Assembly (NCBI GenBank): GCA_002269645.1
Contig: NIVC01000430.1
Coordinates: 136,766-200,765, forward strand
DNA length: 64,000 nucleotides
From: Macrostomum lignano
Taxonomy: Eukaryota
Reading direction: 5' to 3'
Shown: in pieces, positions 20,765-64,000 of the stretch
Numbering within the stretch: position 1 is the stretch's first letter
Layout: each line of letters begins with the position of its first letter
Position numbers and translations under genes: made by a program
The notes under the pieces: generated by a model
Database searches by the model: none
Seen by the model: the letters and a program-made list of their open reading frames with translations, nothing else
Told to the model about the DNA's origin: nothing

Positions 20765-23246
<2,482 letters not shown>

Positions 23247-37761: not shown

Positions 37762-40700
37762 ATGACGCTTGCAACAACTTGTCGTCGACTGCTGACTCCG
37801 GCGGCAACCGCCTTGCGTCGTTACTATTCGCCAACTTCTGATTCGCCTCGCAATCGAGTCGCTATTCTGGGCGCCTGCGGCGGTCTCGGCCAGCCATTGT
37901 CACTAATAATGAAGCGCTCGGAATATATTGCCGAATTGGCGCTATACGACAAAGTGGACACCGCCGGCTTGTGCGCCGATCTTAGTCACATCTCGACTAA
38001 GGCGGCGATCAAAGGCTACCAGGGTGGCGATCAGCTAGGCGACTGCCTGACTGGCTGCAGCGTGGTGGTCATGATTGCTGGGATTCGGAGGTGAGGTCGG
38101 CTAGATTAATAGAATTTTTACCATAGCTCGTCTATGAACCATCCCTCCCAACAATCTCCTTATAGGACCCATTTATCAAGTACCCCAATCTCTCTCTATG
38201 ACCCACTAATCAAACACGCCAATCTCTTTCTATGACGCACTAATCAAACACCCCAATCTCCTTCTATGACCCATTTAGCCAACACCCCAATCTCCTTCTA
38301 TGACCCATTTAGCCAACACCCCAATCTCCTTCTATGACCCATTTAGCCAACACCCCAATCTCCTTCTATGACCCATTTAGCCAACACTCCAATCTCCTTC
38401 TATGACCCATTTAGCCAACACCCTAATCTCCTTCTATGACCCATTTAGCCAACACTCCAATCTCCTTCTATGACCCATTTAGCCAACACCCTAATCTCCT
38501 TCTATGACCCATTTAGCCAACACTCCAATCTCCTTCTATGACCCATTTAGCCAACACCCCAATCTCCCTCTATGACCCATTTAGCCAACACCCTAATCTT
38601 CTTCTATGACCCATTTAGCCAACACCCCAATCTCTTTCTATGACGCACTAATCAAACACCCCAATCTCCTTCTATGACCCATTTAGCCAACACCCCAATC
38701 TCCTTCTATGACCCATTTAGCCAACACCCCAATCTCCTTCTATGACCCATTTAGCCAACACCCCAATCTCCTTCTATGACCCATTTAGCCAACACCCCAA
38801 TCTCCTTCTATGACCCATTTAGCCAACACCCCAATCTCCTTCTATGACCCATTTAGCCAACACCCCAATCTCCTTCTATGACCCATTTAGCCAACACCCC
38901 AATCTCCTTCTATGACCCATTTAGCCAACACCCCAATCTTCTTCTTCTTCTTCTTCTAATATACTAAAAATGAAATGCTTGGTTGCTTGCTTGTAATTGA
39001 TTTTCTCCCGAACGGCTCAACCGATTTTCTTCAAACTTGCACCATTCGATCAGAAATTTTCCCGGGACGGTACATGCATATTGGCTAAGAAATTGCTCAA
39101 TGTTAAAGGGATTAAATATTCGAAAAACATGATTTTTTGCAAAGGTCAAGCAGCTCTTTCGACCTGAAATGCATTGTAAGAATGCTAGAGAAAAACTGAC
39201 TGGTTGAATTCTGATTCTGAAATAGATTGCATCACAATACACTTTATTTATCGTCTGTGTACTGGCTGAATTTGACACTCAATTGAATTGCGTCACAGCT
39301 TTGAGGGTGAAAGTATAGTGCAGTACTGAATTTATATTACGTAACCATATTGTTAACTTTCATAGACACTGGTACTGACTTGCCTAAGAAATTGATTATG
39401 TCATAACTGCTTCGCGTGACTTTTTACTCTACCTGACTTGGTGTGAGTGTTGAATTAATTATATAAGTGGTACAAATTCACTGATAACTTCGATGAGAGC
39501 TAGCCTAGAGCTGAGCAGACCAGACTGCTAATGCAGCGACCTGGGTTCGAATCTAAGTAGTTTAAAAGTAGTAGTGTAAAATTTTTTATTAAAAGCTTTT
39601 ATTAAAGGACTAAATAAAAACACTTAGATTACTGCACTCGATAAGCTAAGGATTATTGCTCTTGGCAAACCAAGGAATACTGCACTCGATAAGCCAAGGA
39701 TTATTGCTCTTGGCAAACCAAGGATTACTGCACTCGATAAGCCATGGATTATTGCTATTAATAAACCAAGGATTACTGCACTCGATAAGCCAAGGATTAT
39801 TGCTATTAATAAACCATGAATTACTGCACTCGATAAGCCAAGGATTATTGCTATTAATAAACCAAGGATTACTGCACTCATAAGCCATGGATTATTGCTA
39901 TTAATAAACCAAGGATTACTGCACTCGATAAGCCAAGGATTATTGCTATTAATAAACCAAGGATTACTGCACTCGATAAGCCAAGGATTATTGCTATTAA
40001 TAAACCAAGGATTACTGCACTCGATAAGCCAAGGACTATTGCTATTAATAAACCAAGGATTACTGCACTCAATAAACCAAGGACTATTGCTCTTGGCAAA
40101 CCAAGGATTACTGCACTCGATAAGCCAAGGACTATTGCTCTTGGCAAACCAAGGATTACTGCACTCGATAAGCCATGGATTATTGCTATTAATAAACCAA
40201 GGATTACTGCACTCGATAAGCCAAGGATTATTGCTATTAATAAACTAAGGATTACTGCACTCGATAAACCAAGGATTATTGCTATTAATAAACCAAGGAT
40301 TATGCACTTGGCAAACCAAGGATTACTGCAATCGATAAGCCAAGGATTATTGCTATTAATAAACCAAGCATTACTGCACTCAATAAACCAAGGACTATTG
40401 CTATTAATAAACCAAGGATTACTGCACTCAAAAAACCAAGGACTATTGCTCTTGGCAAACCAAGGATTACTGCACTCGATAAGCCAAGGATTATTGCTAT
40501 TAATAAACCAAGGATTACTGCACTCGATAAGCCAAGGATTATTGCTATTAATAAACCAAGGATTAATGCACTCGATAAACCAAGGATTATTGCTATTAAT
40601 AAACCAAGGATTACTGCACTCGATAAGCCAAGGATTATTGCTATTAATAAACCAAGGATTATGCACTTGGCAAACCAAGGATTACTGCACTCGATAAGCC

Positions 40701-43700
40701 AAGGATTATTGCTATTAATAAACCAAGGATTACTGCACTCAATAAACCAAGGACTATTGCTATTAATAAACCAAGGATTACTGCACTCAATAAACCAAGG
40801 ACTATTGCTCTTGGCAAACCAAGGATTACTGCACTCGATAAGCCAAGGACTATTGCTCTTGGCAAACCAAGGATTACTGCACTCGATAAGCCATGGATTA
40901 TTGCTATTAATAAACCAAGGATTACTGCACTCGATAAGCCAAGGATTATTGCTATTAATAAACCAAGGATTACTGCACTCGATAAACCAAGGATTATGCA
41001 CTTGGCAAACCAAGGATTACTGCACTCGATAAGCCAAGGATTATTGCTATTAATAAACCAAGGATTACTGCACTCAATAAACCAAGGACTATTGCTATTA
41101 ATAAACCAAGGATTACTGCACTCAATAAACCAAGGACTATTGCTCTTGGCAAACCAAGGATTACTGCACTCGATAAGCCAAGGACTATTGCTCTTGGCAA
41201 ACCAAGGATTACTGCACTCGATAAGCCATGGATTATTGCTATTAATAAACCAAGGATTACTGCACTCGATAAGCCAAGGATTATTGCTATTAATAAACCA
41301 AGGATTACTGCACTCGATAAACCAAGGATTATTGCTATTAATAAACCAAGGATTATGCACTTGGCAAACCAAGGATTACTGCACTCGATAAGCCAAGGAT
41401 TATTGCTATTAATAAACCAAGGATTACTGCACTCGATAAGGCATGGATTATTGCTATTAATAAACCAAGGATTACTGCACTCGATAAGCCAAGGATTATT
41501 GCTATTAATAAACCATGAATTACTGCACTCGATAAGCCAAGGATTATTGCTATTAATAAACCAAGGATTACTGCACTCGATAAGCCATGGATTATTGCTA
41601 TTAATAAACCAAGGATTACTGCACTCGATAGCCAAGGATTACTGCGCTTGATAAGCTTGGCTACATGTATAGGATTATTTCTATCCAGGGATGCTTGCTA
41701 TTTAGGGATTCTTGCTATGTGCAGGATGCTTGCTATCTGGAAGGATGATTCTACATTATTTGGGGTATGCTTGCTATCTGCAAGATGCTTGCTATCTGCA
41801 AGATGCTTGCTATCTGCAGATGCTTGCTATCTGGGTGGATGCTTGCTAGGAGTATTAGGGGATGCTTGCTACTGGGGGGATGCTTGCTGTCTTGGGAATA
41901 TTTTCTATTTAGGGGTAATGACTAAAATTCATGAGAGCTAGCCTAGAGGTAAACAGACTAAACTGCTAAATGCAGGGACGATGGTTCGAATTTTTAGAGA
42001 GTAGAGTTTTTTTAATTAAAGCCTTTTAACGCCAAGACAAAAAAAATTATGGAAGCGTCATGTAAACAATCATACAAGCGTCATGTAAACAATCATAGAA
42101 GCGTCATGTAAACAATCATAGAAGCGTCATGTAAAAATCATAGAAGCGTCATGTAAAAATCATAGAAGCGTAATGTAAACAATCATAGAAGCGTCATGTT
42201 AAAATCATAAAAGCGTCATGTAAACAATCATACAAGCGTCATGTAAACAATCATAGAAGCGTCATGTAAAAAAATCATAGAAGCGTCATGTTAAAATCAT
42301 AAAAGCGTCATAAAAAATCATAGAAGCGTCATGCAAGCAATCATAGAAGCGTAATGTAAACAATCATAGAAGCGTCATGTTAAAATCATACAAGCGTCAT
42401 GTAAACAATCATACAAGCGTCATGTAAACAATCATAGAAGCGTCATGTAAAAAAATCGTAGAAGCGTCATGTTAAAATCATAGAAGCGTCATGTAAAAAT
42501 CATAGAAGCGTCATGTAAAAATCATAGAAGCGTCATGTAAAAAATCATAGAAGCGTCATGTAAAAATCATACAAGCGTCATGTAAAAAATCATAGAAGCG
42601 TCATGTAAAAATCATAGAAGCGTCATGTAAAAAATCATAGAAGCGTCATGTAAAAATCATACAAGCGTCATGTAAACAAGCATAGAAGCGTCATGAAAAA
42701 ATTATAGAAGCCTCATATAAAAACTAATGAAAGTGTGTCATTTAAAAAATTAAGAAGCATCATGGAAGAATAAAAGAAGCGTAACGTAAAAATCAAAAGA
42801 AGCGTCATGTCAGACATGAAAGAAATGTCATATAAAAATTAAATGAAGCTATAGTACAGTGCTGTGCTGGGGAGAATTACTGAGACGTCAAGGCTCACAG
42901 AGAATAACTGAGATTACAGGGGGTTTCTGAGATGTTAAAGCAAAAGTCAGAAGCTACTTCAAAGTACATGTACTTTACTTAAGTTTTTTATTGCACACGG
43001 CTTGCCACGGTGGGGGGGGGGCGCTGATAGAAGAAGAGTCATGTAAAAATAAAAGGAGCACTATGTATACATAAAATAAAAGTCATGTCAAAGTTAAAAG
43101 ATTCATTTGGGAATTGCTACGATGTCAAAGCTTGGAGGGAATCGTTATAGTGCTGTGATTCTTAAAGAAGGAATCACTTAAATGCCAAGGCTTAGGGAAG
43201 AAGAATTGCTGTGATTTCAAGGCTTTAGGTTGGGTGAAAGTTAGGTTTACGTCAGGTTTGGGTTGAGGGTTAGATTTTAGCGCGTTTCAAGGTTAACAGG
43301 GGATTTTTTAGATTTCAAGGTTTATGGGGGCATCGCTGACATGTCAAGGCTTACGAGGGGAATCTATCTATCTATCTATAGCTGAGATGTCAAGGCTCAC
43401 GGGGGAATAAATGAGATGTCAAGGCTAATGTCAGAAGCTACATGTAGTTTATTGGAAAAAAGTTATTACATTATTTGTTGGCTCCTCACGGGAGGGATCG
43501 CTGATAGAAAAAGCGTAATGTAAAAAAAAAGAAGCTTCATGTCAAAGTTAAGAGATTCATTTGGGAATCCCTACGATGTCGAGGCTTGCAGGGAATCGCT
43601 ATAATGCTGTAGTAGTGCTATAGACTCTTAGAGAGAATTACTGAAATTTCAATGCTTTAGGGTTAGGGTTAGGGTTAGGGTTAGGGTTAGAAAATAGACA

Positions 43701-46393
43701 GATTTTTTAAGATTTCAAGGCTTGTGGGAGCATTGCTGAGATGTCAAGGGGGGAGTTGATATGTTAAGGCTTGTGGGGGGGGGATTGCTGACATGTCAAG
43801 GCTTACAAGGGTACTGGTAGCGTACTGAAGCATACTGGTAGAAGTAGCTCTGAAAGAAGGCAAGTATGGTTGAATTTCAATGTCTGTTATAAAATTCTGC
43901 ACAAACATGTTTTATTGGTACATAAGCCTGGAATTAAAATGAGAATTCGATTCCTAGCCCCCCTCCCTAAGAATTTTTTTCATTTAAAAGGATTCGTCCC
44001 TTGCTTATTGGCCACCCCGAAGGCCATTTTTTATCAAAAATGATAAAAATAATTTTTATCAAACACGTTGACATATACAGGGCTCTAAACTAAAAACTGT
44101 AAAAAGTTGATAGTTTTGTTTTACCTAAAATGCGTTATTAACGGTCTCCAAAAATTCCTATTTTAAGCTTAAGCTTAAGAAAAACACTTAAAGTACTCCT
44201 GCTAAAAGGTATATTATATTAGACGAATATTAATTATTTCTGCTCCCCGAAGGGGGGCAAAACTTTAGCTAGTCTCCTTCTATGACCCATTTAGCCAACA
44301 CCCTAATCTCCTTCTATGACCCATTTAGCCAACACCTCAATCTCCTTCTATGACCCATTTAGCCAACACCCCAATCTCCTTCTATGACCCATTTAGCCAA
44401 CACCCCAATCTCCTTCTATGACCCATTTAGCCAACACCCCAATCTCCTTCTATGACCCATTTAGCCAACACCCCAATCTCCTTCTATGACCCCGTCCCCT
44501 TCCACAAAAATCGCAATCTAATTATCTAACACGCGTAAATGAATTATTGAAGTGTGAAATCCCAACTCTACCACCTGATATCACATCGCACCCCTGTCAG
44601 GCAGCCGGGCATGCACCGTGACAGCCTATTCCAACAGAACGCCACCATTGTTGCCGAGCTAACAGACGCCGTTGCTAAGCACTGCCCGAAGGCCCAGCTG
44701 TGCATACTCACCAATCCTATTAATAGCAACGTGCCCCTAGCTGCCGAGATTCTCAAGCACCGAGGGGTGCACGACCCGCGTCGGCTGTACGGCATCACCA
44801 CTGTTGACTCTGTGCGAGCTGACGTAGTCTATGCCAAGTTAACTGGTCACCCGCTCGACAAGGTTTGAGCATGGGAATTTATTAGGGATCTATCATCTTC
44901 ATCAATGTCCTCTGAAGCTTCCTCTAGGAGCAGTGAAATCCCATTCCTGATTTCATTATCTTCATCTCGACCCAGCTTCCTGCTGTGAGCAGTTGAGATC
45001 CCATCTATCTGCCTCATCTTCATCTCTATTCGATCCCTTCAGCTTCCTGCTGTGAGCAGTTGAGATCCCATCTATCTGCCTCATCTTAATCTCGATCTCG
45101 ATCCCTTCAGCTTCCTCTGTGAGCAGTTGAAATCCCATCTATCTGCCTCATCTTAATCTCGATCTCGATCCCTTCAGCTTCCTCTGTGAGCAGTTGAAAT
45201 CCCATCTATCTGCCTCATCTTAATCTCGATCTCGATCCCTTCAGCTTCCTCTGTGAGCAGTTGAAATCCCATCTATCTGCCTCATCTTAATCTCGATCTC
45301 GATCCCTTCAGCTTCCTCTGTGAGCAGTTGAGATCCCATCTATCTGCCTCATCTTCATCTCTATTCGATCCCTTCAGCTTCCTCCGTGAGAAGTTGAAAT
45401 CCTATCTATCTGCCTCATCTTAATCTCGATCTCGATCCCTTCAGCTTCCTCTGTGAGCAGTTGAGATCCCATCTATCTGCCTCATCTTAATCTCGATCTC
45501 GATCCCTTCAGCTTCCTCTGTGAGAAGTTGAAATCCTATCTATCTGCCTCATCTTTATCGCGATCCAGTTCAGCTTCCTCTGTGAGCAGTTGAAATCACA
45601 TCTATCTGCCTCATCTTAATCTCGATCCCTTCAGCTTCCTCTGTGAGCAGTTGAAATCCCATCTATCTGCCTCATCTTCATTCTAATCCCTTCCCAGCTT
45701 CCTCTGTGAGCAGTTGAGATCCCATCTATCTGCCTCATCTCCATTCTAATCCCTTCCAGCTTCCTCTGTGAGCAGTTGAGATCCCATCTATCTGCCTCAT
45801 CTTCATTCTAATCCCTTCCAGCTTCCTCTGTAAGCAATTGAAGCTCCATCCCCCTTATCTTCATCCCAATCCAGCTTCCTGTGTTCCGGGAGATCTCATC
45901 TACATCATTCAATTCAGAGATCCCCTAACCCTCAATCCAGGTGAGCGTGCCCGTACTAGGCGGTCACAGCGGCCACAGTCTGGTGCCGGCCTTCAGCCAG
46001 GCCCAGCCACCCAGCCGCCTGTCACCCGAGGATGTCCGCCGCCTCACTGAATCCGTACGCGGCGCCGCCGACGCTATCGTCGCTGTGAAAGCCGGCGGCG
46101 GTTCGGCGACGCTCTCCGTAGCCGCCGCCGCTCATCGTTTCGTCAACTCGGTGCTGCTAGCCCTGGACGGCCGGCAGAACATTATTGAATCGGCTTTTGT
46201 CGAGTCCGACGCCATGCCCGACCTGCCATTCTTCTCCTGCCCGTTGCTGCTTGGCCAGAACGGCGTCGAACGAAATTTAGGCGTCGGCCAGCTGTCCGAG
46301 TACGAGGCCGAACTGATGAAAGCGGCCGTGGCCGAGCTTCGAGTCCAGATAGAAAAGGGCCAGGAATTTGGCTTGGCCTGGGCAAAGCGATGA
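37762..46393 (+). CDS. MDH2: Malate dehydrogenase, mitochondrial (MDH2-type, divergent), 347 aa; exons 37762-38090, 44601-44862, 45941-46393
   Basis: Arg/Ser/Thr-rich transit-like N-terminus; NAD motif GACGGLGQPLSL; LYD; loop AGIRRQPGMHRDSLF; NPINS; TTVDSVRA; catalytic GGHSG; GSATLS. GT..AG phases consistent (1044 nt). Confidence 0.93.
38145..38936. repeat. 34-bp minisatellite (TCTCCTTCTATGACCCATTTAGCCAACACCCCAA), left part; resumes at 44273-44492
   Basis: Same unit and register on both sides of the Helitron insertion. Confidence 0.97.
39493..39621 (+). other. tRNA-like (A-box/B-box) module, copy 1; diverged copy 2 at 41931-42028
   Basis: Shared ATGAGAGCTAGCCTAGAG start, CTGCTAA loop, GGTTCGAAT B-box and TTAAA(A)GC(T/C)TTTTA tail. 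Stems do not pair as a functional tRNA. Confidence 0.5.
39628..41650. repeat. 48-bp satellite of two diverged 24-bp halves with ~335-359 bp higher-order repeats
   Basis: GGATTACTGCACTCGATAAGCCAA + GGATTATTGCTATTAATAAACCAA; the 23-bp variant marker recurs at 40302, 40661, 40996 and 41355. Confidence 0.95.
42050..42720. repeat. 22-23 bp minisatellite (TAGAAGCGTCATGTAAA[C/A]AATCA)
   Basis: About 29 copies, decaying into degenerate copies to ~43550. Confidence 0.95.
43657..43690 (+). repeat. Interstitial telomeric repeat (TTAGGG)5 TTAG
   Basis: Exact hexamers; a degenerate counterpart lies at ~43225-43272. Confidence 0.85.
44273..44492. repeat. 34-bp minisatellite, right part
   Basis: About 6 copies, continuing the register broken at 38936. 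Confidence 0.95.
44960..45900. repeat. 59-67 bp minisatellite (CAGCTTCCTCTGTGAGCAGTTGAAATCCCATCTATCTGCCTCATCTT...), MDH intron 2
   Basis: About 14 copies. Confidence 0.95.
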
Positions 46394-49199: not shown

Positions 49200-50024
49200 T
49201 TAAACGAGCGGGTCGGAGCACTGGCAGACCACCGGGAAGCTGTCCGTGTCCGGATAGTCGGACAGCTTGCGCTGAAGCAGCACGCCGGCATTCTCGGCGG
49301 CCAAATTGTTGTTCGGCTGGTCGGCGTCCCACACGGCCGACCAAACTGGCAGCCGCGGCGGGCTGGGACCAGCGCAGGGATGCCAGTGCCAGCCGCCGGC
49401 AGGCTCCGAGGAGTTTGGCAGCTGGACGGCGCCAGTCCAAACCGGGTTGCCGATGGCGCCGCCGTAGATGACCAACGCCGATTCGATGTCGTCGTCGTTG
49501 TCCAGCTGGGCCGGTCTGGTCAACTCGCCGTCAGCTAAGCACCTGGCCGCCTGCGTGGACCAGTTTCCAACGGAGGTGTATAGTTTGTACTTGTAGCCAT
49601 GGTAACCGCCGGTCGTGTTAGCGGCTACTCGATAATCAGGCGGGCAGGTCGCGCCGGCTCGAATGTACACGGTGACGTTGATGGCGTCAGTGGGCACCTC
49701 ACCGACTGTGCAGTTTGATCTGCGGACTGCGGCGCTGCAGCGGCTCCACGCGTAGAGGCTGCACCGACCGCGGGCGGCATCGAAACTGAACGCCCTACAA
49801 TCGGCCTGCGCTGAGCAGGCCACGGCGCAGGGTCGCTCGTCGGAGTAGACAGCCGCCAGCCGTCTGATGTACTCGGAGGCCACGCACAGCAACGGCAGAC
49901 GGACGGGGCTGTAGATTTTGCCGCCGGCATCGCGGCTGTTGCAGCTGCTGGCTGTTTCCATGGCAACTAAAGTCGCTAGTAGAGCGGTAAGCATTAGCGA
50001 CATTTTTAACGATGACGCTCTCAT
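49200..50024 (-). CDS. Secreted PAN/apple + C-type-lectin-like domain protein, 274 aa, single coding exon
   Basis: Signal peptide; apple motif CAVACSAQADCRAFSFDAARGRCSLY; CTLD features NWSTQAARC, VWTGA, WHW, WDADQPNN, FPVVCQ. Confidence 0.85.
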   Translation of the reverse strand: MRASSLKMSLMLTALLATLVAMETASSCNSRDAGGKIYSPVRLPLLCVASEYIRRLAAVYSDERPCAVACSAQADCRAFSFDAARGRCSLYAWSRCSAAVRRSNCTVGEVPTDAINVTVYIRAGATCPPDYRVAANTTGGYHGYKYKLYTSVGNWSTQAARCLADGELTRPAQLDNDDDIESALVIYGGAIGNPVWTGAVQLPNSSEPAGGWHWHPCAGPSPPRLPVWSAVWDADQPNNNLAAENAGVLLQRKLSDYPDTDSFPVVCQCSDPLV

Positions 50025-51395: not shown

Positions 51396-52880
51396 TTAAA
51401 CAAGCGCAGGCAGCAGCATCAACAGCAGCTGTACAGCAGCGAGCATGATCGACAGTTGCCCAGCTGATGCGGACATGACGAACTTGGAGGCCAATGCCAC
51501 AGCGCCGCTGCCATTAGCCTGGCAGGCCATGGCTTCGCAGGCCCGCAGCACCCGCTTCTGCTGCTGTTGCTCCATCAGCTGCGGCTGCAACCCCAAGCTG
51601 GGCATCAGAAAGTCCACGAACAGCTGAAACGAAGCTTCCGGCTTCTCAATCGGGGTGCTGTGACCCGCGCCAGACACCGACCTGTACCGAATGGTGAAGG
51701 CGTTCAAGGACGTCTCAGAGCCGCCCACCTGAACGGAAGCGGCGCCGAACATGCACTGGCAGTAGTACCAGGAGTAGCGGTTGCCCTGTAGCGGCCAGGT
51801 CATATTGTCGACGAAGCCCGCCGTGGCCAGGTAAGGCAACAGGTAGTCTAGGTTGCCATTGTACAGCAGTACATCAATTTTGCTCCTGTTGAGCAGCAGT
51901 AGCTGATGGGTCAGGGCCTCATTGCGGAAATCGTAGCTTGTGAAGATGCGGCCGCTGCAGATGTGATAGCGCTTGGCCTGCGGCGACACGCCCAAAGCGC
52001 GACGCACGTCCGGCCTCTGCAGGTAGTGCTCCATGGCGGTGGTGTTCAAACACCTGTACGAGTCGTTGTAGCCCAGGATGTTGTGATGGCAGAGGCTCTC
52101 AACATTGTACTCATTGAAAGTCGGATCGGGATCTTTGGAGAGTTTCTCAGTCACGGGCATCAGACCCATGAAGTAGGCGAACTCGGCCCTGGCTGCTAGC
52201 ATCGCCTCGCGACCCATAAAGTAGCCGTTACCAATGGCGACGCCTCGAAGTCGAAGGCCGTCTGGTCTTGACAACCGTTCATCTGCCAGAAGCGCCTCGG
52301 CCAGTAGCGGCAGGTAGACTCCGGCGTAGCTCTCGCCGGTCAGGTAGAAGTTCCTGGCCCGATACTCTGGGAACAGCAGCAGGAACTGACGCAGCGCAAG
52401 GATGTTGTCGCGAGTGGTGCTCCCATCGTTCCAGCGAAATTTGCTGGACGTCCGGGCCTTGCCGTAGCTAAAGCCGACACCTGCCGGCGATTCCAGGTAG
52501 AGCATGTTGGCCACACGGTTCCAGGCCCAGGGATTGTGCACCAGCTGGGCCCGGTCGTTCACCAGGAACGGCCCATTGGTGGTCAGCAGGCCGCCGATGG
52601 ACGAGCAACCGGGGCCGCCGTTCAACCACAGGACCAGCGGCGCCTCTTCCGGCGGCTTCTCCGAGCTCTCCACCAGCCAGTAGAACAGGCGGCTGTTCGA
52701 CTGCTCAGCCGCCTGCAGGTAGCCGGAGTATTGGCCAAATCGTGGACCCATCGTCGGCTGGCCTGGCAGGTTGACGATGCGGTGCCTCTGAGCACTGAAC
52801 GGTTGCGACATCAGCGATAGCGACATCGTCAACCACAGCAACAGCAGCTGGAGATTGTGGTGGCTCAGATGAAGTGCCAT
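51396..52880 (-). CDS. Serine carboxypeptidase, peptidase family S10 (cathepsin A/CPVL-like), 494 aa, intronless CDS, hydrophobic C-terminus
   Basis: Signal peptide; GQYSGYL, LWLNGGPGCSS, catalytic GESYAG, GVAIGNG, YNGNLD (Asp), GAGH (His). Confidence 0.93.
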   Translation of the reverse strand: MALHLSHHNLQLLLLWLTMSLSLMSQPFSAQRHRIVNLPGQPTMGPRFGQYSGYLQAAEQSNSRLFYWLVESSEKPPEEAPLVLWLNGGPGCSSIGGLLTTNGPFLVNDRAQLVHNPWAWNRVANMLYLESPAGVGFSYGKARTSSKFRWNDGSTTRDNILALRQFLLLFPEYRARNFYLTGESYAGVYLPLLAEALLADERLSRPDGLRLRGVAIGNGYFMGREAMLAARAEFAYFMGLMPVTEKLSKDPDPTFNEYNVESLCHHNILGYNDSYRCLNTTAMEHYLQRPDVRRALGVSPQAKRYHICSGRIFTSYDFRNEALTHQLLLLNRSKIDVLLYNGNLDYLLPYLATAGFVDNMTWPLQGNRYSWYYCQCMFGAASVQVGGSETSLNAFTIRYRSVSGAGHSTPIEKPEASFQLFVDFLMPSLGLQPQLMEQQQQKRVLRACEAMACQANGSGAVALASKFVMSASAGQLSIMLAAVQLLLMLLPALV

Positions 52881-54781: not shown

Positions 54782-55647
54782 ATGGCCCTGACTCTGCCTC
54801 TGGCGTCAGATCCGGCGTCAGATCCGGCTGTCAAGTCACCTTCTAGTCCAGCGACAACGCCGCACCACCAGCCGCAGCAGCAGCAGCCTCCGCCGTCGCC
54901 AGCAAAGTTGACGTCTCAACCCGAAGAGATTGGTTCCAACCCTTTCTTAGACGCATTCTTTGCGGTTGACAAAGACCATAGCGAGTCCATCACATCCGAG
55001 GAACTGTCGGATTACATGTCCAATTCTCAGTTTGAGAACAACTTTGGAGAGGTAAATGTATACGCTTATTAAAGTTGTAAAATTACTTTACTGAGGTTAC
55101 ACTAAGAAGCTACATGAATGTAACGCCTAAATTCGACGTCACTCTTTCGCTCAGAAATGGATGAAGCTCTTTGACGAAGACGCTGACGGTACGATCACTC
55201 TGGAAGAGTACTGCAACGTACTTGGTCTCAACCCGAAACAGGCGTAAGTCAACTTGGTTTGCTAACGTGCTACATCTGATGTTGGGTTTGGAATATATTA
55301 AAATGAATGCATCACTTAGGAGAGTCTATCGCGACAAGAAAGTCAGAGCCGTCTGCTTAAAAGAGAACCGATTGACCGAAGACGTCGCCTGCATTTCGGC
55401 CAGTATGCAGTTGGAGACGCAGTTAGACGTAATTGAAGTATTTCGCGAGGCTCAGCGTCGCAGTCAGCAGGCCAGAGACATTGCGGCCTACATGAAAACC
55501 CAGCTGGATCAGCAGTTTGGTCGCCTGTGGCACATTGTGCTGCTGACTGGACAGTACTGGGCCAGCTACAGTCACGAGCCGGGGATGGCGCTATTCTTCA
55601 AATCCAACAAGTTCATCGTGATGGCCTGGCGAACGCCCGGCATTTAG
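54782..55647 (+). CDS. Tegument-allergen-like (TAL) protein: 2 EF-hands + dynein-light-chain-like domain, 228 aa; exons 54782-55051, 55155-55243, 55320-55647
   Basis: EF loops DKDHSESITSEE and DEDADGTITLEE; DLC-like IAAYMKTQLDQQFGRLWHIV...FFK...VMAWRTP. GT..AG phases consistent (687 nt). Confidence 0.9.
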
Positions 55648-56996: not shown

Positions 56997-58832
56997 TCAC
57001 ACTCGTCGCTTGATGCCGAAATCCTCGAAGTCCAGCATGGCGTCTTCCTCCTTGGAGACGTGCAGGATTCTTCGTTGCAGGCCGATGCTGGCCGGCTTAA
57101 AGTTCTCTCCGTCGTTGGCCTCCTTGATGGATTTGACGGCTTCCACGGTCTGAGGAATTTTTTCAATTGGTTTTGGTTGCATTTCGTAAAAAACCATAAA
57201 CATTTAATGTCAGGTATACTCTACTGACAAAAGTAGAAATGAAAACATTTTTTCGAGAATTTTCGTAAAAATCTATAGATGTTTCATGCAAGAGATACTC
57301 TACTGAAGAAAGTAGAAATGGAAAAATTTTTCGATAACTTTTTCTACCAACAGTAAACATAAAAGCATTTTATGCATTTTAGGTTTTTGCATAGATCAAA
57401 TTATGTGAGCTTTTTCTCACCCAGTCGAAGACGGCGAATGCGGCCGGACTCTGCAGGGCCATCTCGCGCCTGTCGATGCCGCTGAGAATCTGCTGACTGC
57501 GCGCGGCGATGCGCGGATCAACGCTGGTAGCGTCGAAGCCACCATTGGCGAGGCGTTCGACGCCCTTCAGCAGCGGCTGGCAGCGCTTCCATTTCTGGAG
57601 GGAATTCATTGAAATGGGCGCGCTTGTTGTCAGTGAGAGGCTTCATCACTGATTTGAAGAGGGAGAATCTGCAGTGCGCACTTCGATCTTAAACTAATTG
57701 CATTTCATTTGCTTCCCGAATTCCCTCCATTTCTCTACCGGAATCCCCTCCATTTCTCTACCGGAATTCCCTCCATTTCTCTACCGGAATCCCCTCCATT
57801 TCTCTACCGGAATCCCTCAATTTGTCTCCATGAATTCCCTCCATTTCTCTACCGGAATCCCTCCATTTCTCTCCATGAATTCCCTCAATTTCTCTACCAG
57901 AATTCCCTCCATTTCTCTACCGGAATTCCCTCCATTTCTCTACCGGAATCCCCTCCATTTCTCTACCGGAATCCCCTCCATTTCTCTACCGGAATTCCCT
58001 CCATTTCTCTACCGGAATCCCTCAATTTGTCTCCAGGAATTCCCTCCATTTCTCTACTGGAATCCCTCCATTTCTCTACTGGAACCCCTCCATTTCTCTA
58101 CCGGAATTCCCTCCATTTCTCTACTGGAATTCCCTCCATTTCTCTACCGGAATCCCTCAATTTGTCTCCAGGAATTCCCTCCATTTCTCTACCGGAACCC
58201 CTCCATTTCTCTACTGGAATTCCCTCCATTTCTCTACCGGAATTCCCTCCATTTCTCTACCGGAATCCCCTCCATTTTTCTACCGGAACCCCTCCATTTC
58301 TCTCCATGAATTCCCTCCATTTCTCTACCGGAATTCCCTCCATTTCTCTACCGGAATCCCCTCCATTTTTCTACCGGAACTCCCTTCATCTACGCCTGGC
58401 CAAGTCCCAAGCTGCTGCTGCAGCCAGTCAAACGCTCACCCTGGTCCGTTTTTCATAGTTGCCAGCCAGCAGCAGCAGGGCCCGCACAGTTTTGTGCACC
58501 GACTCCACCGGTCGCTGGTAGGCCCGAAGCTCCAGCAGGCTGCGCGCTGTCATCATCGACTGCTGCTGTTGCTTCTTTTGCATGTCAACGCTGTTCAACT
58601 TCCGTTCGCGTTCGATCAGCTCGTCAGCTTCTTCCAGCTCTGAGCGCAGCATCAGCCGCTGATTGTCTGTCAGACTCTCCGACTTCACCTGCTCCACCAG
58701 CTGGGTCAGCCGGCCGACACTGCGATACTTCTTCGATCGGCTGATGGCCGAGCGGAGGACTGCGGAGTATGAGCGGGTCTTGCTGCAGACAGACAGACAG
58801 ACAGACAGACAGACGGACAGACAGACGGACAG

Positions 58833-58870
<38 letters not shown>

Positions 58871-58916
58871 GGACAGACAGACAGACGGACAGACAGACGG
58901 GCAGACAGACGGGCAG

Positions 58917-58951
<35 letters not shown>

Positions 58952-61900
58952 GGCAGACAGACGGGCAAACAGACGGGCAGACAGACGGGCAGACAGACGG
59001 GCAGACAGACGGACAGACAGACGGACAGACAGACGGACAGACAGACGGGCAGACAGACGGGCAGACAGACGGGCAGACAGACAGACAGACAGACGGGTAG
59101 ACAGACGGGCAGACAGACGGGCAGACAGACGGGCAGACAGACGGGCAGACAGACGGACAGACAGACGGACAGACAGACGGACAGACAGACGGGCAGACAG
59201 ACGGGCAGACAGACGGGCAGACAGACGGACAGACAGACGGGCAGACAGACAGACAGACAGACGGACAGACAGACAGACAGACAGACGGGCAGACTCACTT
59301 TTCCGCTGCTCCAGAGCGTGCAGTGTCAGCTTGGCCTCCTTGAGCTTCTTCACCTCGCGCTCCTTCAGCATGATCCGCTCGGCAGCGGCCTCGGTCTCGG
59401 AGATGGCATCGCCAATTCTGTCGGCGTTGCGCAGCTTGGCCAGCAGGGCGGAGTCGAGCTCGGCAAAGCGCAGCTTCAGCTGCTCCCGCCGCGGCGAAGT
59501 CTTGGAACCTCCGGCGCCCTGCTGTTTGGCCGTTGGCTGGCCTCTGCCCTGCGATTGTTCGATAGAGAAAAAAGCCATCAGCTGAGATTTTAACTATAAA
59601 AGCTTTTCTCGTAAAACTGTCACTCACGGTAAAGCTACTCACAGTAGTCACTGCTCTACCGGGCGACACACCACCAGAAGGCCGAGGCGATCTGACGGGC
59701 GGAAGCGTTTTCTGCTTCGAAGAATGAGAAGCAGCAACTGGCTGCTCCTGTGGCTGCTTTGTTGGCTTCCTTTGATCTTTAGCGGCTTGTGCCTCGTCAG
59801 CTGCGAAAGCTGCCGGTTGAGCCTCCCCGGCTGGGGTAGCTTCCGGTTGAGCCTCCTCGGCTGGAGCAGCTTCCGGTTGAGTCTCCTCGGCTGGGGCAGC
59901 ATCCGGTTGAGCCTCCTCGGCTGGGGTAGCTTCCGGTTGAGCCTCCTCGGCTGGGGTAGCTTCCGGTTGAGCCTCCTCGGCTTGAGCGGCTTCCGATTGA
60001 GTCTCCTCGGCTGGGGCAGCTTCCGGTTGAGCTTCATCAGTCACTGGCTGCGCATCATCGGCTGGGGTAGCTTCCGGTTGAGCCTCCTCGGCTTGAGCGG
60101 CTTCCGGTTGAGTCTCCTCGGCTGGGGCAGCTTCCGGTTGAGCCTCCTCGGCTTGAGCGGCTTCCGGTTGAGTCTCCTCGGCTGGGGCAGCTTCCGGTTG
60201 AGCTTCATCAGCCACTGGCTGCGCATCATCGGCTGGGGTAGCTTCCGGTTGAGCCTCCTCGGCTGGGGCAGCTTTTGGTTGAGCTTCATCAGCCACTGGC
60301 TGTGCATCATCGACTGGAGCATCTTCCGGTTGAGCCTCATTTTTTGGGATAGCTTCCGGTTGAGCCTCATCAACCACTGGCTGCGCATCCTCGGCTGAAG
60401 CAGCTTCCGGTTGAGCCTCGGCTTGAGCGGCTTCCGGTTGAGTCTCCTCGGCTGGGGCAGCTTCCGGTTGAGCTTCATCAGTCACTCGCTGCGCATCATC
60501 GGCTGGGGTAGCTTCCGGTTGAGCCTCATCAACCACTGGCTGCGCATCCTCGGCTGAAGCAGCTTCCAGTTGAGCCTCCTCGGCTGGGGCAGCTTCCGGT
60601 TGAGCATCGTCGGCTGGGGCAGCTTCCGGTTGAGCCTCATCTTTTGGGGTAACTTCCGGTTGAGCCTCATCAGCCACTGGCTGCGCATCCTCGGCTGGGG
60701 TAGCTTCCGGTTGAGCCTCATCAGCCACTGGCTGCGCATCCTCGGCTGGGGTAGCTTCCGGTTGAGCCTCATCAGCCACTGGCTGCGCATCCTCGGCTGG
60801 GGCGGCTTCCAGTTGAGCCTTCTCGGCTGGTGCAGCTTCCGGTTGTGCCTCATCAGCCACTGGCTGCGCACCCTTGGCTTGGGTAGCTTCCGGTAGAGCC
60901 TCCTCAGCTGGGCCAGCTTCTGGTTGAGCCTCATCGGCTGGGGCAGTTTCCGGTTGAGCCTCCTCGGTAGAGACAGCTTCCGGTTTAGCCTCATCGGCAG
61001 AGGCAGCTTCTGGTTTAGCCTCATCGGTAGAGGCAGATTCCGGTTGAGCCTCATCGGTAGAGGCAGCTTCCGGTTTAGCCTCAGCGGCAGAGGCAGCTTC
61101 CTGTTTAGCCTCATCGGTAGAGGCAGCTTCCGGTTGAACTTCATAGACTTGGGCAGCTTTCGCTTGATCCTCACCAGCCACTGGCTGCGCATCCTCGGCT
61201 GGGGCAGCTTCCGGTTGACCATCATTAGCGGAGGCAGCTTCTGGTTTAGGCTCATCGGTTGAGGCAGTTTTTCGTTGAGCCTCATCAGCAACTGTCTGCG
61301 CATCCTCGGCTGGGGCAGCTTCCGGTTTAGCTTCTTCGGTTGAGGCATCTTCTAGTTTAGCCTCCTTGGTCAAGGCAGCTTCCGGTTGAACCTCATCAGC
61401 TTGTGAAGCTTCTTGCGCTTGAGCCTCATCGGCTTGAGCAGCTTCTTCTGGTTGAGCGTCATCGGCTTGAGCAGCTTCTTCTGGTTGAGCGTCATCGGCT
61501 TGAGCAGCTTCTGGTTGAGCCTCATCGGCTTGAGCAGCTTCTGGTTGAGCCTTCTCGGCTGGAGCAGCTTCCTTTTGAGCATCATCGGATTGAGCAGCTT
61601 CTTCTGGTTGATCGTCATCGGCTTGAGCAGCTTCAGATTGAGCCTCATCGGCTTGAGCAGCTTCCTTTTGAGCATCATCGGGTTGTGCAGCTTCCTTTTG
61701 AGCATCATCGGATTGAGCAGCTTCTTCTGGTTGAGCCTCATCGGCTTGAGCAGCTTCCGGTTGAGCCTCACTGGCTTGAGCAGCTTCCGGTTGAGCCTCA
61801 CTGGCTTGAGCAGCTTCCGGTTGAGCCTCATCGGCTGGAGCAGCTTCCTTTTGAGCATCATCGGATTGAGCAGCTTCTTCTGGTTGATCGTCATCGGCTT

Positions 61901-63522
61901 GAGCAGCTTCCTTTTGAGCATCATCGGATTGAGCAGCTTCTTCTGGTTGATCGTCATCGGCTTGAGCAGCTTCCTTTTGAGCATCATCGGATTGAGCAGC
62001 TTCTTCTGGTTGATCGTCATCGGCTTGAGCAGCTTCAGATTGAGCCTCATCGGCTGGAGCAGCTTCCTTTTGAGCATCATCGGGTTGTGCAGCTTCCTTT
62101 TGAGCATCATCGGATTGAGCAGCTTCTTCTGGTTGAGCCTCATCGGCTTGAGCAGCTTCCGGTTGAGCCTCACTGGCTTGAGCAGCTTCCGGTTGAGCCT
62201 CACTGGCTTGAGCAGCTTCCGGTTGAGCCTCATCGGCTGGAGCAGCTTCCTTTTGAGCATCATCGGATTGAGCAGCTTCTTCTGGTTGATCGTCATCGGC
62301 TTGAGCAGCTTCCTTTTGAGCATCATCGGATTGAGCAGCTTCTTCTGGTTGATCGTCATCGGCTTGAGCAGCTTCAGATTGAGCCTCATCGGCTTGAGCA
62401 GCTTCCTTTTGAGCATCATCGGGTTGTGCAGCTTCCTTTTGAGCATCATCGGATTGAGCAGCTTCTTTTGGTTGAGCCTCATCGGCTTGAGCAGCTTCCG
62501 GTTGAGCCTCACTGGCTTGAGCAGCTTCCGGTTGAGCCTCATCGGCTTGAGCAGCTTCCGGTTGAGCCTCATCGGCTTGAGCAGCTTCCGGTTGAGCTTC
62601 ATCGGCTTGAGCAGCTTCCGGTTGAGCATCATTGGCTTGAGCAGCTTTTTCTGGTTGAGCGTCATCGGCTTGAGCAGCTTCCGGTTGAGCCTCATTGGCT
62701 TGAGCAGCTTCAGGTTGAGCCTCATCGGCTTGAGCAGCTTCCTTTTGAGCATCATCGGCTTGTGAAGCTTCCTTTTGAGCGTCATCGGCTTGAGCAGCTT
62801 CCGGTTGAGCCTCATTGGCTTGAGCAGCTTCCTTTTGACCATCATCGGATTGAGCAGCTTCTTCTGGTTGAGTGTCATCGCTTTGAGCAGCTTCTTTTTG
62901 AGCGCCATCGGCTTCAACAGCTTCCTGTTGAGCGTCATCGGCTGGGGCAGCTTCCTTTTGAGCCTCATCGGCTTGAACAGCTTCCTGTTGAGCGTCATCG
63001 GCTGGGGCAGCTTCGTTTTGAGCCTCATCGGCTTGAACAGCTTCCTGTTGAGCGTCGTCGGCTGGGGCAGTATCAGGTTGAGCGTCATCAGCTGGAGCAG
63101 CTTCCTTTTGAGCATCATCGGATTGAACAGCTTCCGGTTGAGCCTCATTAGCTTGATCAGCTTCCGGTTGAGCCTCATTAGCTTGAGCATCTTCAGCTTG
63201 GGAATCATTCTCTTGTGCGTTGTGCTCTTGATAAGCTTCTAATTTAGCTTCATCAGCTTTGAGCAGCTTCTTTTCGCTGAGCGTCATCGCCTTGAGCAGC
63301 TTTCGGTTGAGCATCGTCGGCTGGAGCAGCTTCCGGTTGAGCATTGTCGGCTGGAGCAGCTTCTGGTTGAGCATCGTCGGCTGGAGCAGCTTTTGGTTGA
63401 GCCTCATCGGCTTGAGCAGCTTCTAATTGCTTAGTCCCTCCAAGGGGCTCCGCAGCTGGTTCAGGTGCCGTGTCCTGTCTTACTGACACTCTGTCGCCTT
63501 CACTACGGCCGTTCTTAGGGCT
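56997..63522 (-). CDS. Giant acidic-repeat protein with coiled coil and dynein-stalk MTBD-like C-terminus (5'-partial, ~1,600 aa in window); exons 59643-63522, 59299-59548, 58440-58782, 57421-57594, 56997-57149; two 1-nt frame discrepancies
   Basis: Exon 1: EAAQADEAQP-type repeats. Downstream exons give LLELRAYQRPVESVHKTVRALLLLAG...KWKRCQPLL...FDATSVDPRI...SPAAFAVFDWTVEAV. Canonical splice sites. An extra A at 63258-63260 and a phase mismatch at the 59299/58782 junction need correction. Confidence 0.75.
57720..58385. repeat. 23-24 bp minisatellite (CCCTCCATTTCTCTACCGGAAT[T/C])
   Basis: About 28 copies; intronic; source of ORFs 57698-58458. Confidence 0.95.
58787..59292. repeat. (CAGA)n/(CAGACGG[A/G])n repeat filling almost the whole intron 58783-59298
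   Basis: Direct inspection. Confidence 0.97.
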
Positions 63523-64000
63523 CTGTTGACGGATGAAAAAGTTTGGAAGTGACAAATATGTTTATAGTCGAGTACATCGATAGGCTCGTACTATGGAGTA
63601 GACAAGTAGATTTGATTGGCTGTTATTATGCTCGTAAATAGTGCAAAATATAACGTCGGTATCAAATGCGTATGAAATAATAAAGCGGTGATGTAAACAG
63701 GCCTTCCTTAAAGTGTGAGCAGATCGCTGACTTTTCGCGCCACCCTGTGTGAGCGCGTGTGCATGAGTGCGTGCCTGCGTGCAACATTGGCGAGCTCGTA
63801 TGTGCTCAGGAGTGAGCGGAGACGATGTCGCTGAAGGCATGTTACCGGGGTGCCCACGGACCTTTTGTACTCGTAATAATAATTATTATTATTATTATGC
63901 TAGTAATTCATTTTTTTGGTAACTCTGTAAGACTCAGTAATGAAAGACTCAGTTATGAAATGTTTTGAGCACAAGTATTCAACTTCATACGGTTATAATT

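What the first reader, a model, noticed from the sequence alone, without database searches (positions are those of the whole stretch)
56997..63522. Motor-less dynein-stalk microtubule-binding domain on a ~1,290-aa acidic repeat arm
Seen: the spliced C-terminal exons read RSLLELRAYQRPVESVHKTVRALLLLAG-x7-WKRCQPLL...FDATSVDPRI...EMALQSPAAFAVFDW, preceded by helical/coiled-coil exons and a 3.9-kb exon of A/E/D/Q/P repeats almost free of aromatics and Cys. Knowledge: the dynein heavy-chain stalk MTBD follows the pattern LxExRxxxxPxxxVxxxxxxxxLLxG...WK...F...I...SxA...W and binds acidic tubulin through basic helices; the basic segment (RTRKWKR) is retained here. No AAA ring lies next to it. Inference: a stand-alone microtubule tether or spacer (cilia, sperm or cortical microtubules) with a long polyanionic disordered arm. 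This is the best candidate for an undescribed system in the window.
Basis: partly seen in the sequence, partly recalled or inferred. Interest (0 to 1): 0.8.

Follow-up and report, generated by a model that had tools for sequence, protein, structure and literature searches.

The report
Motor-less dynein microtubule-binding head, acidic arm
A flatworm (Macrostomum lignano) gene ends in a true relative of the small domain dynein uses to grip microtubules, with no motor attached and probably preceded by a 1,290-residue acidic tail; it belongs to a widespread animal, fungal and algal family that I found described in no paper.

Summary
A minus-strand gene (63522..56997, five exons, all introns GTGAG...CAG) ends in a ~105-aa basic domain (pI 10.3). 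That domain is homologous to the dynein heavy-chain microtubule-binding domain (MTBD). The window protein alone matches nothing in Pfam or PDB. A profile of 35 family members hits only dynein MTBDs in PDB (best E 2.4e-12), and 11 of 35 members match Pfam PF12777. AlphaFold models (pLDDT 91-93) retrieve dynein MTBDs first (TM 0.71 to 6RZB, normalised to the 6RZB chain).

The protein stops about 50 aa after the MTBD. So there is no return stalk helix and no AAA5/6, and the window holds no AAA motor.

The domain belongs to a family of at least 136 cluster representatives (flatworms, molluscs, annelids, amphioxus, a sponge, a chytrid, a glaucophyte). Eight of the ten family members scanned with Pfam are KY/hillarin-like proteins (transglutaminase-like and/or Ig-like_KY domains).

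The acidic arm is plausible but less certain. It needs one base dropped at 63259-63261. Database models read it in another frame. Its 5' end touches the window edge, so upstream KY-type exons cannot be excluded.

Microtubule binding and a spacer role are inferred, not shown.

The parts
59643..63522 (-). Exon 1: about 115 copies of a 30-nt (10-aa) repeat, consensus (E/D)AQPEAAQAD. This is the polyanionic arm: 1,293 codons if one A at 63259-63261 is dropped.
   Evidence: Codon-position variability among copies is 15.7/13.1/22.8%. pN/pS among copies is 0.75 in the acidic frame, 0.87 in the basic frame and 1.08 in the third frame. In the stretch of exon 1 tested for pN/pS (59700-63250) the acidic frame has no stop codon; over the whole exon the reading frame that carries the acidic repeat downstream of 63259 has 2 stops (both upstream of ATG 63407) and the +1 basic frame has 13.
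63259..63261 (-). One extra A in the run CAAAG. It shifts the acidic frame, leading to a stop at 63253-63255. It is either an assembly error or a real lesion.
63523..63528 (-). CAACAG acceptor-like site bounding exon 1. It could be a spliced-leader trans-splice acceptor or a cis acceptor. There is no in-frame ATG between it and the repeats, and a TATAAA-like element lies ~35 nt upstream.
   Evidence: The M. lignano spliced leader ends in ATG and its acceptor motif is [T/C]TNCAG (PMC8629364). The match here is only partial.
59582..59642 (-). Intron 1 (61 nt, GTGAGT...TCTCAG). It joins the acidic frame to exon 2 in phase 0.
   Evidence: This junction is my model. The database models instead use a non-consensus GTGTGT donor at 59671 and an acceptor at 59549, which puts exon 1 in the basic frame.
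59299..59581 (-). Exon 2: first helical hairpin of the pedestal (REQLKLRFAELDSALLAKLRNADRIGDAISE...LHALEQRK).
   Evidence: Identical in P0001-P0003. Aligned with family members. AF2 helices 2-75, pLDDT above 95.
58760..59298 (-). Intron 2 (539 nt), almost entirely a (CAGACGGACAGA)n microsatellite.
58440..58759 (-). Exon 3: second helical hairpin, the CC1-equivalent helix and MTBD helix H1 (SLLELRAYQRPVESVHKTVRALLLLAGNYEKRTR).
57595..58439 (-). Intron 3 (845 nt) holding a 23-nt tandem repeat (57718-58389, ~30 copies).
57421..57594 (-). Exon 4: MTBD helices H2/H3 to H6 (KWKRCQPLLKGVERL...SPAAFAVFDW). It contains the invariant Trp54 and Trp110 (numbering of the 160-aa first row of alignment A2).
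57150..57420 (-). Intron 4 (271 nt, GTGAGA...CCTCAG).
56997..57149 (-). Exon 5: the short CC2 stub (TVEAVKSIKEA), a C-terminal tail carrying the family motif PAxxxxQ(R/K)xI(L/F), and the stop codon.
   Evidence: The tail helices are predicted with high confidence.

Best explanation
The locus encodes a non-motor microtubule-associated protein. Its last ~280 residues form a module that is conserved across eukaryotes. The module consists of two helical hairpins (a 'pedestal'), a dynein-type six-helix microtubule-binding domain that is strongly basic (pI 10.3, net +8), and a short tail with a conserved PAxxxxQ(R/K)xI(L/F) motif.

The polypeptide ends ~50 residues after the MTBD. It therefore has no CC1/CC2 antiparallel stalk and no AAA ring, so the registry-sliding switch that lets dynein alternate between strong and weak binding cannot operate. 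The head is most likely a constitutive, ATP-independent anchor on the acidic tubulin surface.

In this paralogue the anchor is most likely preceded, in the same reading frame, by ~1,290 residues of proline-punctuated A/E/D/Q repeats (net charge about -300). Such a chain should be disordered and repelled by the microtubule lattice. It would then act as a projection or brush that spaces microtubules or excludes other binders. Alternatively it could fold back on the basic head as an E-hook mimic.

Shown here: the gene structure of exons 2-5, homology and fold of the MTBD, absence of a motor, and family membership. Inferred: translation of the acidic arm with the head, microtubule binding, and the spacer or auto-inhibitory role.
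For: Organism and exons: 99-100% identity to M. lignano proteins. All introns are GTGAG...CAG, matching the species consensus (PMC8629364).

Homology: a 2-sequence profile finds 136 cluster representatives with E<=1e-3. A 35-member profile hits only dynein heavy-chain MTBDs in PDB; the best is 6KJN at E 2.4e-12, covering profile positions 11-124, and all 60 listed chains are dynein. Eleven of 35 members match Pfam PF12777 'Microtubule-binding stalk of dynein motor', best E 7.3e-7.

Fold: AF2 gives pLDDT 91.1 for the last 160 aa and 92.7 for 278 aa. In Foldseek the top hits are dynein MTBD or stalk structures, with probability up to 1.0; the TM-score normalised to the target chain is 0.71 to 6RZB_C and 0.58 to 6KJO. 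The family-invariant residues Pro29, Trp54 and Trp110 are present. The MTBD has 19 K/R against 11 D/E. The dynein MTBD interface is likewise strongly positive (PMC4987762).

No motor: the stop codon lies 50 aa after H6. The window contains no AAA, transglutaminase-like or Ig-like_KY sequence.

Arm in frame: the third codon position of the acidic frame is the most variable among repeat copies. The acidic frame has the lowest pN/pS and no stops. A consensus GTGAGT donor joins it in phase to exon 2. Several relatives also carry low-complexity, net-acidic stretches upstream of the MTBD, and the M. lignano paralogue in L001 has an Ala/Glu-rich stretch contiguous with the coil.
Against: On its own the window protein matches neither Pfam MT nor any PDB sequence, so homology rests on the family profile and predicted structures. 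Foldseek E-values are weak (0.002-0.5), as expected for a small all-helical domain.

The acidic frame has a 1-nt frameshift at 63259-63261 and no in-frame ATG at its start. No database protein uses the acidic frame. Three database models read the exon in the +1 frame. The pN/pS advantage of the acidic frame is modest (0.75 against 0.87).

I had no expression data. Microtubule binding is untested. A short CC2 stub could leave the head in a low-affinity conformation.
Confidence: 0.6

Rival explanations
1. The window holds only the 3' part of a KY/hillarin-like gene. Transglutaminase-like and Ig-like_KY exons would lie upstream of position 64000, and the acidic repeat would be an expanded linker between them and the MTBD module. 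The protein would then anchor a transglutaminase-like module on microtubules rather than being a pure tether.
For: Eight of the 10 family members scanned with Pfam carry Ig-like_KY, and five of them also carry Transglut_core. The M. lignano paralogues do as well: P0007 and the gene around P0004 in L001, which has Ig-like_KY upstream of the coil. Exon 1 begins at an acceptor-like CAACAG with no in-frame ATG.
Against: The 478 nt upstream of exon 1 (63523-64000) show no coding similarity to KY proteins, and no such exon lies anywhere in the window. In the L001 paralogue the KY exons abut the linker exon closely. A TATA-like element and a possible spliced-leader acceptor sit at the exon start. Other family members carry the module on non-KY N-termini: an amphioxus 'mucin-3A-like' protein, a CLCA-like membrane protein, and 350-aa proteins.
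Confidence: 0.3
2. The repeat exon is not translated with the MTBD. The real product would be a short protein of ~310-400 aa, starting for example at ATG 59578 in exon 2 or as in the database models. The acidic ORF would be a by-product of a stop-poor tandem repeat in a 5' UTR or outron.
For: Tandem repeats keep several frames open: the +1 frame has ORFs up to 612 aa and the plus strand up to 582 aa. The acidic frame carries a frameshift. No database protein uses the acidic frame. An ATG opens exon 2. Short family members of 250-360 aa exist.
Against: The acidic frame alone is stop-free over about 3.6 kb (1,205 codons). It shows the third-position variability and the lowest pN/pS expected of a coding frame. 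Its composition is kept strictly: 0 Cys and 3 aromatics in 1,293 residues. A consensus donor places it in phase with exon 2.
Confidence: 0.15
3. This copy is a decaying paralogue (pseudogene) of the MTBD family in the highly duplicated M. lignano genome, and the frameshift is real.
For: There is a 1-nt frameshift at 63259-63261. No exact match was found for either the protein encoded here or the neighbouring gene's protein among NCBI-annotated products. M. lignano is a hidden polyploid with many gene copies (abstract of PMC10468722, listed).
Against: Exons 2-5 are intact with consensus splice sites, and their protein is nearly identical to those of two other alleles or copies. The extra base sits in a homopolymer run, a typical long-read error. 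With the shift, an ATG at 63407 still opens a 1,564-codon spliced ORF.
Confidence: 0.1
4. The similarity to the dynein MTBD is a chance or convergent resemblance of a small helical bundle.
For: The single sequence gives no Pfam or PDB match. Foldseek E-values are above 1e-3.
Against: The profile E-value is 2.4e-12 over the whole domain, with exclusively dynein hits among 177,635 PDB sequences. Eleven relatives match PF12777 independently. The same helix order and signature residues are shared (E-x-R-x-Y-x2-P...LLG...W...W).
Confidence: 0.01

Closest known systems
Dynein heavy-chain microtubule-binding domain (Pfam PF12777 MT; e.g. PDB 6KJN/6KIO yeast, 6RZB/3ERR mouse, 6RZA DNAH7)
   Same: It is a homologous six-helix bundle with the same helix order. 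It shares the signature E-x-(R/K)-x-(Y/M)-x2-P(P)-x2-V...LL(L)G...W...S-x-A(A)...W and has a basic character. Evidence: profile E 2.4e-12 and target-normalised TM-score up to 0.71.
   Different: There is no AAA+ ring and no long antiparallel CC1/CC2 stalk. CC2 is a ~20-aa stub followed by a 30-aa tail and the stop codon. The head is mounted on two upstream helical hairpins. ATP-driven registry switching is therefore impossible.
KY / hillarin-like proteins with a C-terminal MTBD module (e.g. M. lignano PAA59878.1, Argopecten 'hillarin-like' XP_069137733.1, Helobdella XP_009018530.1, Patella XP_050416660.2)
   Same: They share the same C-terminal ~280-aa module (two hairpins, MTBD and tail motif) at 21-29% identity (22-34% over the MTBD segment; 45-52% to the M. 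lignano paralogues). They belong to one family.
   Different: Those proteins carry Transglut_core and 1-3 Ig-like_KY domains at the N-terminus. None is found in this window. Here the module follows a 3.9-kb acidic repeat instead.
Projection-domain MAPs and polyanionic side-arms (MAP2/tau projection domain, neurofilament side-arms). This is a functional analogy from general knowledge.
   Same: A compact basic microtubule anchor is combined with a long, disordered, charged arm that would extend away from the polymer and set spacing.
   Different: There is no sequence or fold relationship. Tau and MAP2 bind through extended repeats, not a folded dynein-type head. The analogy was not tested here.
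Amphioxus relatives with other N-termini ('mucin-3A-like' XP_066263927.1; 'calcium-activated chloride channel regulator 1-like' XP_035689228.1)
   Same: They have a C-terminal MTBD module after low-complexity or charged linkers. This shows the module is used as a portable anchor.
   Different: The N-terminal parts differ, and one carries a transmembrane segment. They lack the AQPEAA decapeptide array.

Membership tests
Dynein heavy-chain MTBD (PF12777 / structural MTBD) | Significant sequence-profile similarity across the whole MTBD | tested here: met
   The family profile A2 against PDB gives only dynein chains, best E 2.4e-12, profile positions 11-124. Eleven of 35 members hit PF12777. The window sequence alone gives no hit.
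Dynein heavy-chain MTBD (PF12777 / structural MTBD) | Six-helix bundle (H1-H6) at the end of a long helix | tested here: met
   AF2 pLDDT is 91-93, with helices at 31-43, 48-51, 54-69, 79-89, 94-100 and 102-121. Foldseek's top hits are dynein MTBDs, with target-normalised TM-score 0.71 to 6RZB_C. The structures are predicted, not solved.
Dynein heavy-chain MTBD (PF12777 / structural MTBD) | Antiparallel CC1/CC2 coiled-coil stalk leading back to the AAA ring | tested here: not met
   Only ~20 helical residues and a 30-aa tail follow H6 before the stop codon at 56997-56999.
Dynein heavy chain (motor) | Six AAA+ modules flanking the stalk | tested here: not met
   AAA5/6 cannot exist, because the protein ends after the MTBD. 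Upstream lie 3.9 kb of acidic repeats, and no AAA motor was found in the ORFs of the window that I examined. The region beyond 64000 was not available.
Dynein heavy-chain MTBD (PF12777 / structural MTBD) | Binds the tubulin surface of microtubules | not testable with these tools
   The only indirect evidence is the charge: pI 10.3, net +8.
KY/hillarin-like MTBD family | Conserved C-terminal module: two helical hairpins, MTBD and the PAxxxxQ(R/K)xI(L/F) tail | tested here: met
   Alignments A2 and A3. Family search with E down to 1e-100 for M. lignano paralogues and 1e-24 to 1e-10 for molluscs and annelids.
KY/hillarin-like MTBD family | N-terminal Transglut_core (PF01841) domain | tested here: inconclusive
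   Absent from the 64-kb window by tblastn with four family members. The gene's 5' side reaches the window edge, and the flank could not be fetched.
KY/hillarin-like MTBD family | Ig-like_KY (PF23265) domains | tested here: inconclusive
   Same as above: absent from the window, and the sequence upstream is unknown.

The most novel reading that the evidence does not exclude
The C-terminal module would define an ancient family of motor-less dynein-type microtubule-binding heads that I found described in no paper. It occurs in a glaucophyte, a chytrid, a sponge, spiralians and amphioxus. The heads sit on their own helical pedestal instead of the CC1/CC2 stalk and serve as a portable microtubule anchor for KY/hillarin transglutaminase-like proteins, for membrane proteins and, in this gene, for a ~1,290-residue polyanionic brush. 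The family would be either the free-standing ancestor of the dynein stalk tip or an early escape from a dynein gene.
Probability: 0.4. Interest if true: 0.75.

Novelty: new variant of a known kind. Interest (0 to 1): 0.62.

Why it matters
The dynein MTBD is normally treated as a part of the motor whose affinity is set by the AAA ring through the stalk. A conserved family that uses the same head without a motor would matter in four ways.

1. It would show that the head is an autonomous microtubule-binding module.
2. It would give a natural 'locked' MTBD for studying what fixes the affinity state.
3. It would give a way to ask where the dynein stalk tip came from.
4. It would suggest how KY/hillarin-type transglutaminase-like proteins are placed on microtubules. 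These proteins are uncharacterised in most invertebrates.

The Macrostomum paralogue adds an extreme polyanionic arm, which could serve as a model for microtubule spacing or for E-hook mimicry. M. lignano is an established laboratory model, so the prediction can be tested there.

Tried and rejected
- Single-sequence Pfam and PDB searches of the spliced C-terminus, and of P0001-P0004, gave no dynein hit. Homology appeared only with a family profile.
I used exact substrings of P0001 instead.
- I tried to get sequence beyond 64000 or an annotated gene model for the locus. P0003 is not on record. The 1,370-aa ORF is not on record.
- A search for any database protein in the acidic frame found none.
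- Literature searches for a motor-less dynein MTBD, for hillarin or KY together with dynein, and for PF12777 found nothing relevant.
- I considered the +1 'basic' frame used by the database models and rejected it. It has 13 stops in this allele, 9% Met, its variability peaks at its second codon position, and its donor is a non-consensus GTGTGT.
- I rejected an alternative exon 2/3 junction (GA|GTCTGC donor) because P0001 supports the GTGAGT...CCGCAG junction.
- I could not inspect model coordinates, so where the tail helices pack is unknown.
Full report
**What is there.** The window is Macrostomum lignano (flatworm) genomic DNA. Translations of the region are 99-100% identical to M. lignano UniRef proteins. 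On the minus strand I built a five-exon model: 63522-59643, 59581-59299, 58759-58440, 57594-57421 and 57149-56997, ending in TGA. All four introns are GTGAG...CAG (61, 539, 845 and 271 nt). This is the species' cis-splicing consensus (PMC8629364). Introns 2 and 3 are filled with a 12-nt microsatellite and a 23-nt tandem repeat.

**The acidic arm.** Exon 1 is 3,880 nt of a 30-nt repeat.
- In the acidic frame it reads (E/D)AQPEAAQAD about 115 times. Its composition is A 31%, E 16.7%, Q 14.5%, D 11%, P 10.6%, with net charge -301, three aromatic residues and no Cys.
- The 1,293-codon reading needs one A dropped from CAAAG at 63259-63261. As assembled, the long ORF starts at ATG 63407 and runs ~50 codons in the +1 frame before entering the acidic frame.
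- There is no in-frame ATG between the acceptor-like CAACAG at 63523-63528 and the repeats. The M. lignano spliced leader ends in ATG, so trans-splicing there could supply the start codon. That is conjecture.
- Database models P0001-P0003 read the exon in the +1 'basic' frame (RLNRKLLKPM...). They use a non-consensus GTGTGT donor.
- Several points favour the acidic frame. It has no stop codon over 59700-63250, against 13 stops for the basic frame over the whole exon. Differences among repeat copies peak at its third codon position (15.7/13.1/22.8%). It has the lowest pN/pS: 0.75, against 0.87 and 1.08. A consensus GTGAGT donor puts it in phase with exon 2. The M. lignano paralogue in L001 has an Ala/Glu-rich stretch in the same position, contiguous with the coil.
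- The margin is modest, and no database protein uses this frame. I put about 0.7 on the arm being part of the protein.

**What the C-terminal domain is.** Alone, the sequence matches neither Pfam nor PDB.
- A two-sequence profile (this protein plus the 52%-identical paralogue P0004) found 136 cluster representatives with E<=1e-3, usually with the domain at the C-terminus.
- A 35-member alignment has the consensus TxSEIRxYxxPPxxVHxVMxAxLLLLG...W..CQ...FD...P.IA.RA..IL...S.GAA.FY.W, with Pro29, Trp54 and Trp110 invariant.
- As a profile against all PDB sequences, this alignment hits only dynein heavy chains. The best is the yeast cytoplasmic dynein MTBD 6KJN at E 2.4e-12, covering the whole MTBD. 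DNAH6, dynein-2 and mouse dynein-1 follow.
- Eleven of the 35 members individually match Pfam PF12777 'Microtubule-binding stalk of dynein motor', best E 7.3e-7.
- AlphaFold2 with these alignments gives confident models: pLDDT 91.1 for the last 160 aa and 92.7 for 278 aa.
- In Foldseek the top hits are dynein MTBD or stalk structures. For the longer model the first 18 hits are all dynein. The TM-score normalised to the target chain is 0.71 to the microtubule-bound mouse MTBD 6RZB_C and 0.58 (rmsd 4.5 A) to 6KJO.
- The domain is basic, with 19 K/R against 11 D/E and pI 10.3. This agrees with the positive microtubule-facing surface of dynein's MTBD (PMC4987762).
- Homology to the dynein MTBD is therefore well supported.

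**What it is not.** The polypeptide ends ~50 residues after helix H6. After a ~20-residue helix (the remnant of CC2) come two short tail helices and the stop codon. So there is no antiparallel stalk and no AAA5/AAA6.

Upstream of the head the model shows two helical hairpins, made of helices 2-16, 22-36, 43-75, 79-90 and 95-130. These are conserved in sequence across the family, with the pattern L..A....D...L..AI...A...L..L. They appear to form a private pedestal.

The remaining genes I identified in the window are a LIM-domain gene, a malate/lactate dehydrogenase fragment, a PAN-domain protein, a serine carboxypeptidase and an EF-hand plus LC8-type dynein light chain gene. None is an AAA motor, and tblastn finds no KY-type exon in the window.

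**The family.** Of ten longer members scanned, eight carry Ig-like_KY (PF23265), and five of those also carry Transglut_core. Their sources name them 'hillarin-like', 'kyphoscoliosis peptidase' or 'KY-like immunoglobulin-like domain-containing'.

The family occurs in M. lignano, in molluscs (Patella, Lottia, Argopecten, Haliotis, unionids), in annelids (Helobdella, Owenia, Dimorphilus, Ridgeia), in amphioxus, in the sponge Oscarella, in the chytrid Phlyctochytrium and in the glaucophyte Cyanophora.

Other members put the module behind different N-termini. Examples are an amphioxus 'mucin-3A-like' protein, an amphioxus CLCA-like protein with a transmembrane segment, and ~350-aa proteins that RefSeq auto-names 'cytoplasmic dynein 2 heavy chain 1-like'. 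UniRef calls one allele of the present gene 'MT domain-containing protein'. Automated pipelines have therefore noticed the similarity. I found no paper that describes it.

**How it most likely works.** The head should bind the acidic tubulin surface as dynein's MTBD does. Without CC2 and the AAA ring it cannot be switched by helix sliding, so it would be a static, ATP-independent anchor. The ~1,290-residue polyanionic, proline-punctuated arm should be disordered and repelled by the lattice. It would then act as a projection or brush, or fold back on the basic head as a mimic of tubulin C-terminal tails. These steps are inference.

**The main rival (about 0.3).** The window may hold only the 3' part of a KY/hillarin-like gene, with the acidic repeat as an expanded linker. 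M. lignano paralogues have that architecture, and exon 1 starts at an acceptor-like site. I could not obtain sequence beyond position 64000.

**Lesser rivals.** The repeat may be untranslated, giving a short product (0.15). This copy may be a pseudogene (0.1). Chance resemblance is effectively excluded.

**Verdict.** 'Stalk', 'stand-alone' and the spacer function need qualification. This is a new variant of a known kind: a known domain in an undescribed non-motor family context. It is of real interest to cytoskeleton biologists and can be tested directly.

Noticed in passing
window 54782-55647 (+): The convergent neighbour is a three-exon gene (my model: 54782-55051, 55155-55243, 55320-55647). 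It encodes an EF-hand region plus an LC8-type dynein light chain domain (PF01221, E 3.3e-15), the architecture I recall for flatworm tegument-allergen-like proteins. Its best database relative is only 63% identical, so this copy seems unannotated. I have no evidence that its position next to the MTBD gene is more than coincidence.
   Followed up: partly
window 63259-63261 (-): A single extra A in CAAAG breaks the acidic reading frame of the repeat exon. It sits in a homopolymer run, so it may be an assembly error rather than a real lesion.
   Followed up: partly
P0001-P0003 (database models of this gene's alleles): The existing M. lignano protein models translate the repeat exon in the +1 frame (RLNRKLLKPM...) through a non-consensus GTGTGT donor. 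They are probably mis-annotated at the N-terminus. The UniRef cluster names 'Conserved oligomeric Golgi complex subunit 7' (P0001) and 'MAGE domain-containing protein' (for the paralogue P0005) look unrelated to the sequence.
   Followed up: partly
L001 (NIVC01002652.1) 1-1052 and 6529-11062: Two tandem paralogues of the MTBD family lie on one M. lignano contig. The annotated 172-aa product P0004 is a truncated model. Ig-like_KY-coding and Ala-rich ORFs lie directly upstream in the same orientation.
   Followed up: partly
family alignments A2/A3, C-terminal to the MTBD: A short motif, (K/Q)PAxxxxQ(R/K)xI(L/F)G, recurs ~20 residues after the MTBD in flatworm, mollusc and annelid members. It is predicted with high confidence to form helices packing on the domain. 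Its role is unknown.
   Followed up: no
P0073 (Branchiostoma floridae XP_035689228.1) and P0037 (B. lanceolatum XP_066263927.1): Amphioxus proteins carry the same MTBD module at the cytoplasmic end of a CLCA-like protein with a transmembrane segment, and behind a mucin-like low-complexity region. This suggests the module serves as a portable microtubule anchor.
   Followed up: no
window 57718-58389 and 58786-59294; also 20765-21950: Introns 3 and 2 of the gene are dominated by a 23-nt tandem repeat (~30 copies) and a (CAGACGGACAGA)n microsatellite. A similar CAGA/CGGA-type microsatellite of ~1.2 kb lies at 20.8-21.9 kb.
   Followed up: no
window 39878-41635 (-): A long tandem array gives open frames reading NPWFINSNNPWLIECS... 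It was not examined further and is probably a satellite rather than a gene.
   Followed up: no
window 51396-52880 (-), 49200-50024 (-), 45941-46393 (+), 14983-15666 (+): Other genes in the window are an intron-less serine carboxypeptidase S10 ORF of 494 aa (E 2.7e-96), a secreted-looking PAN-domain protein, an exon with the malate/lactate dehydrogenase C-terminal domain, and a LIM-domain exon.
   Followed up: partly
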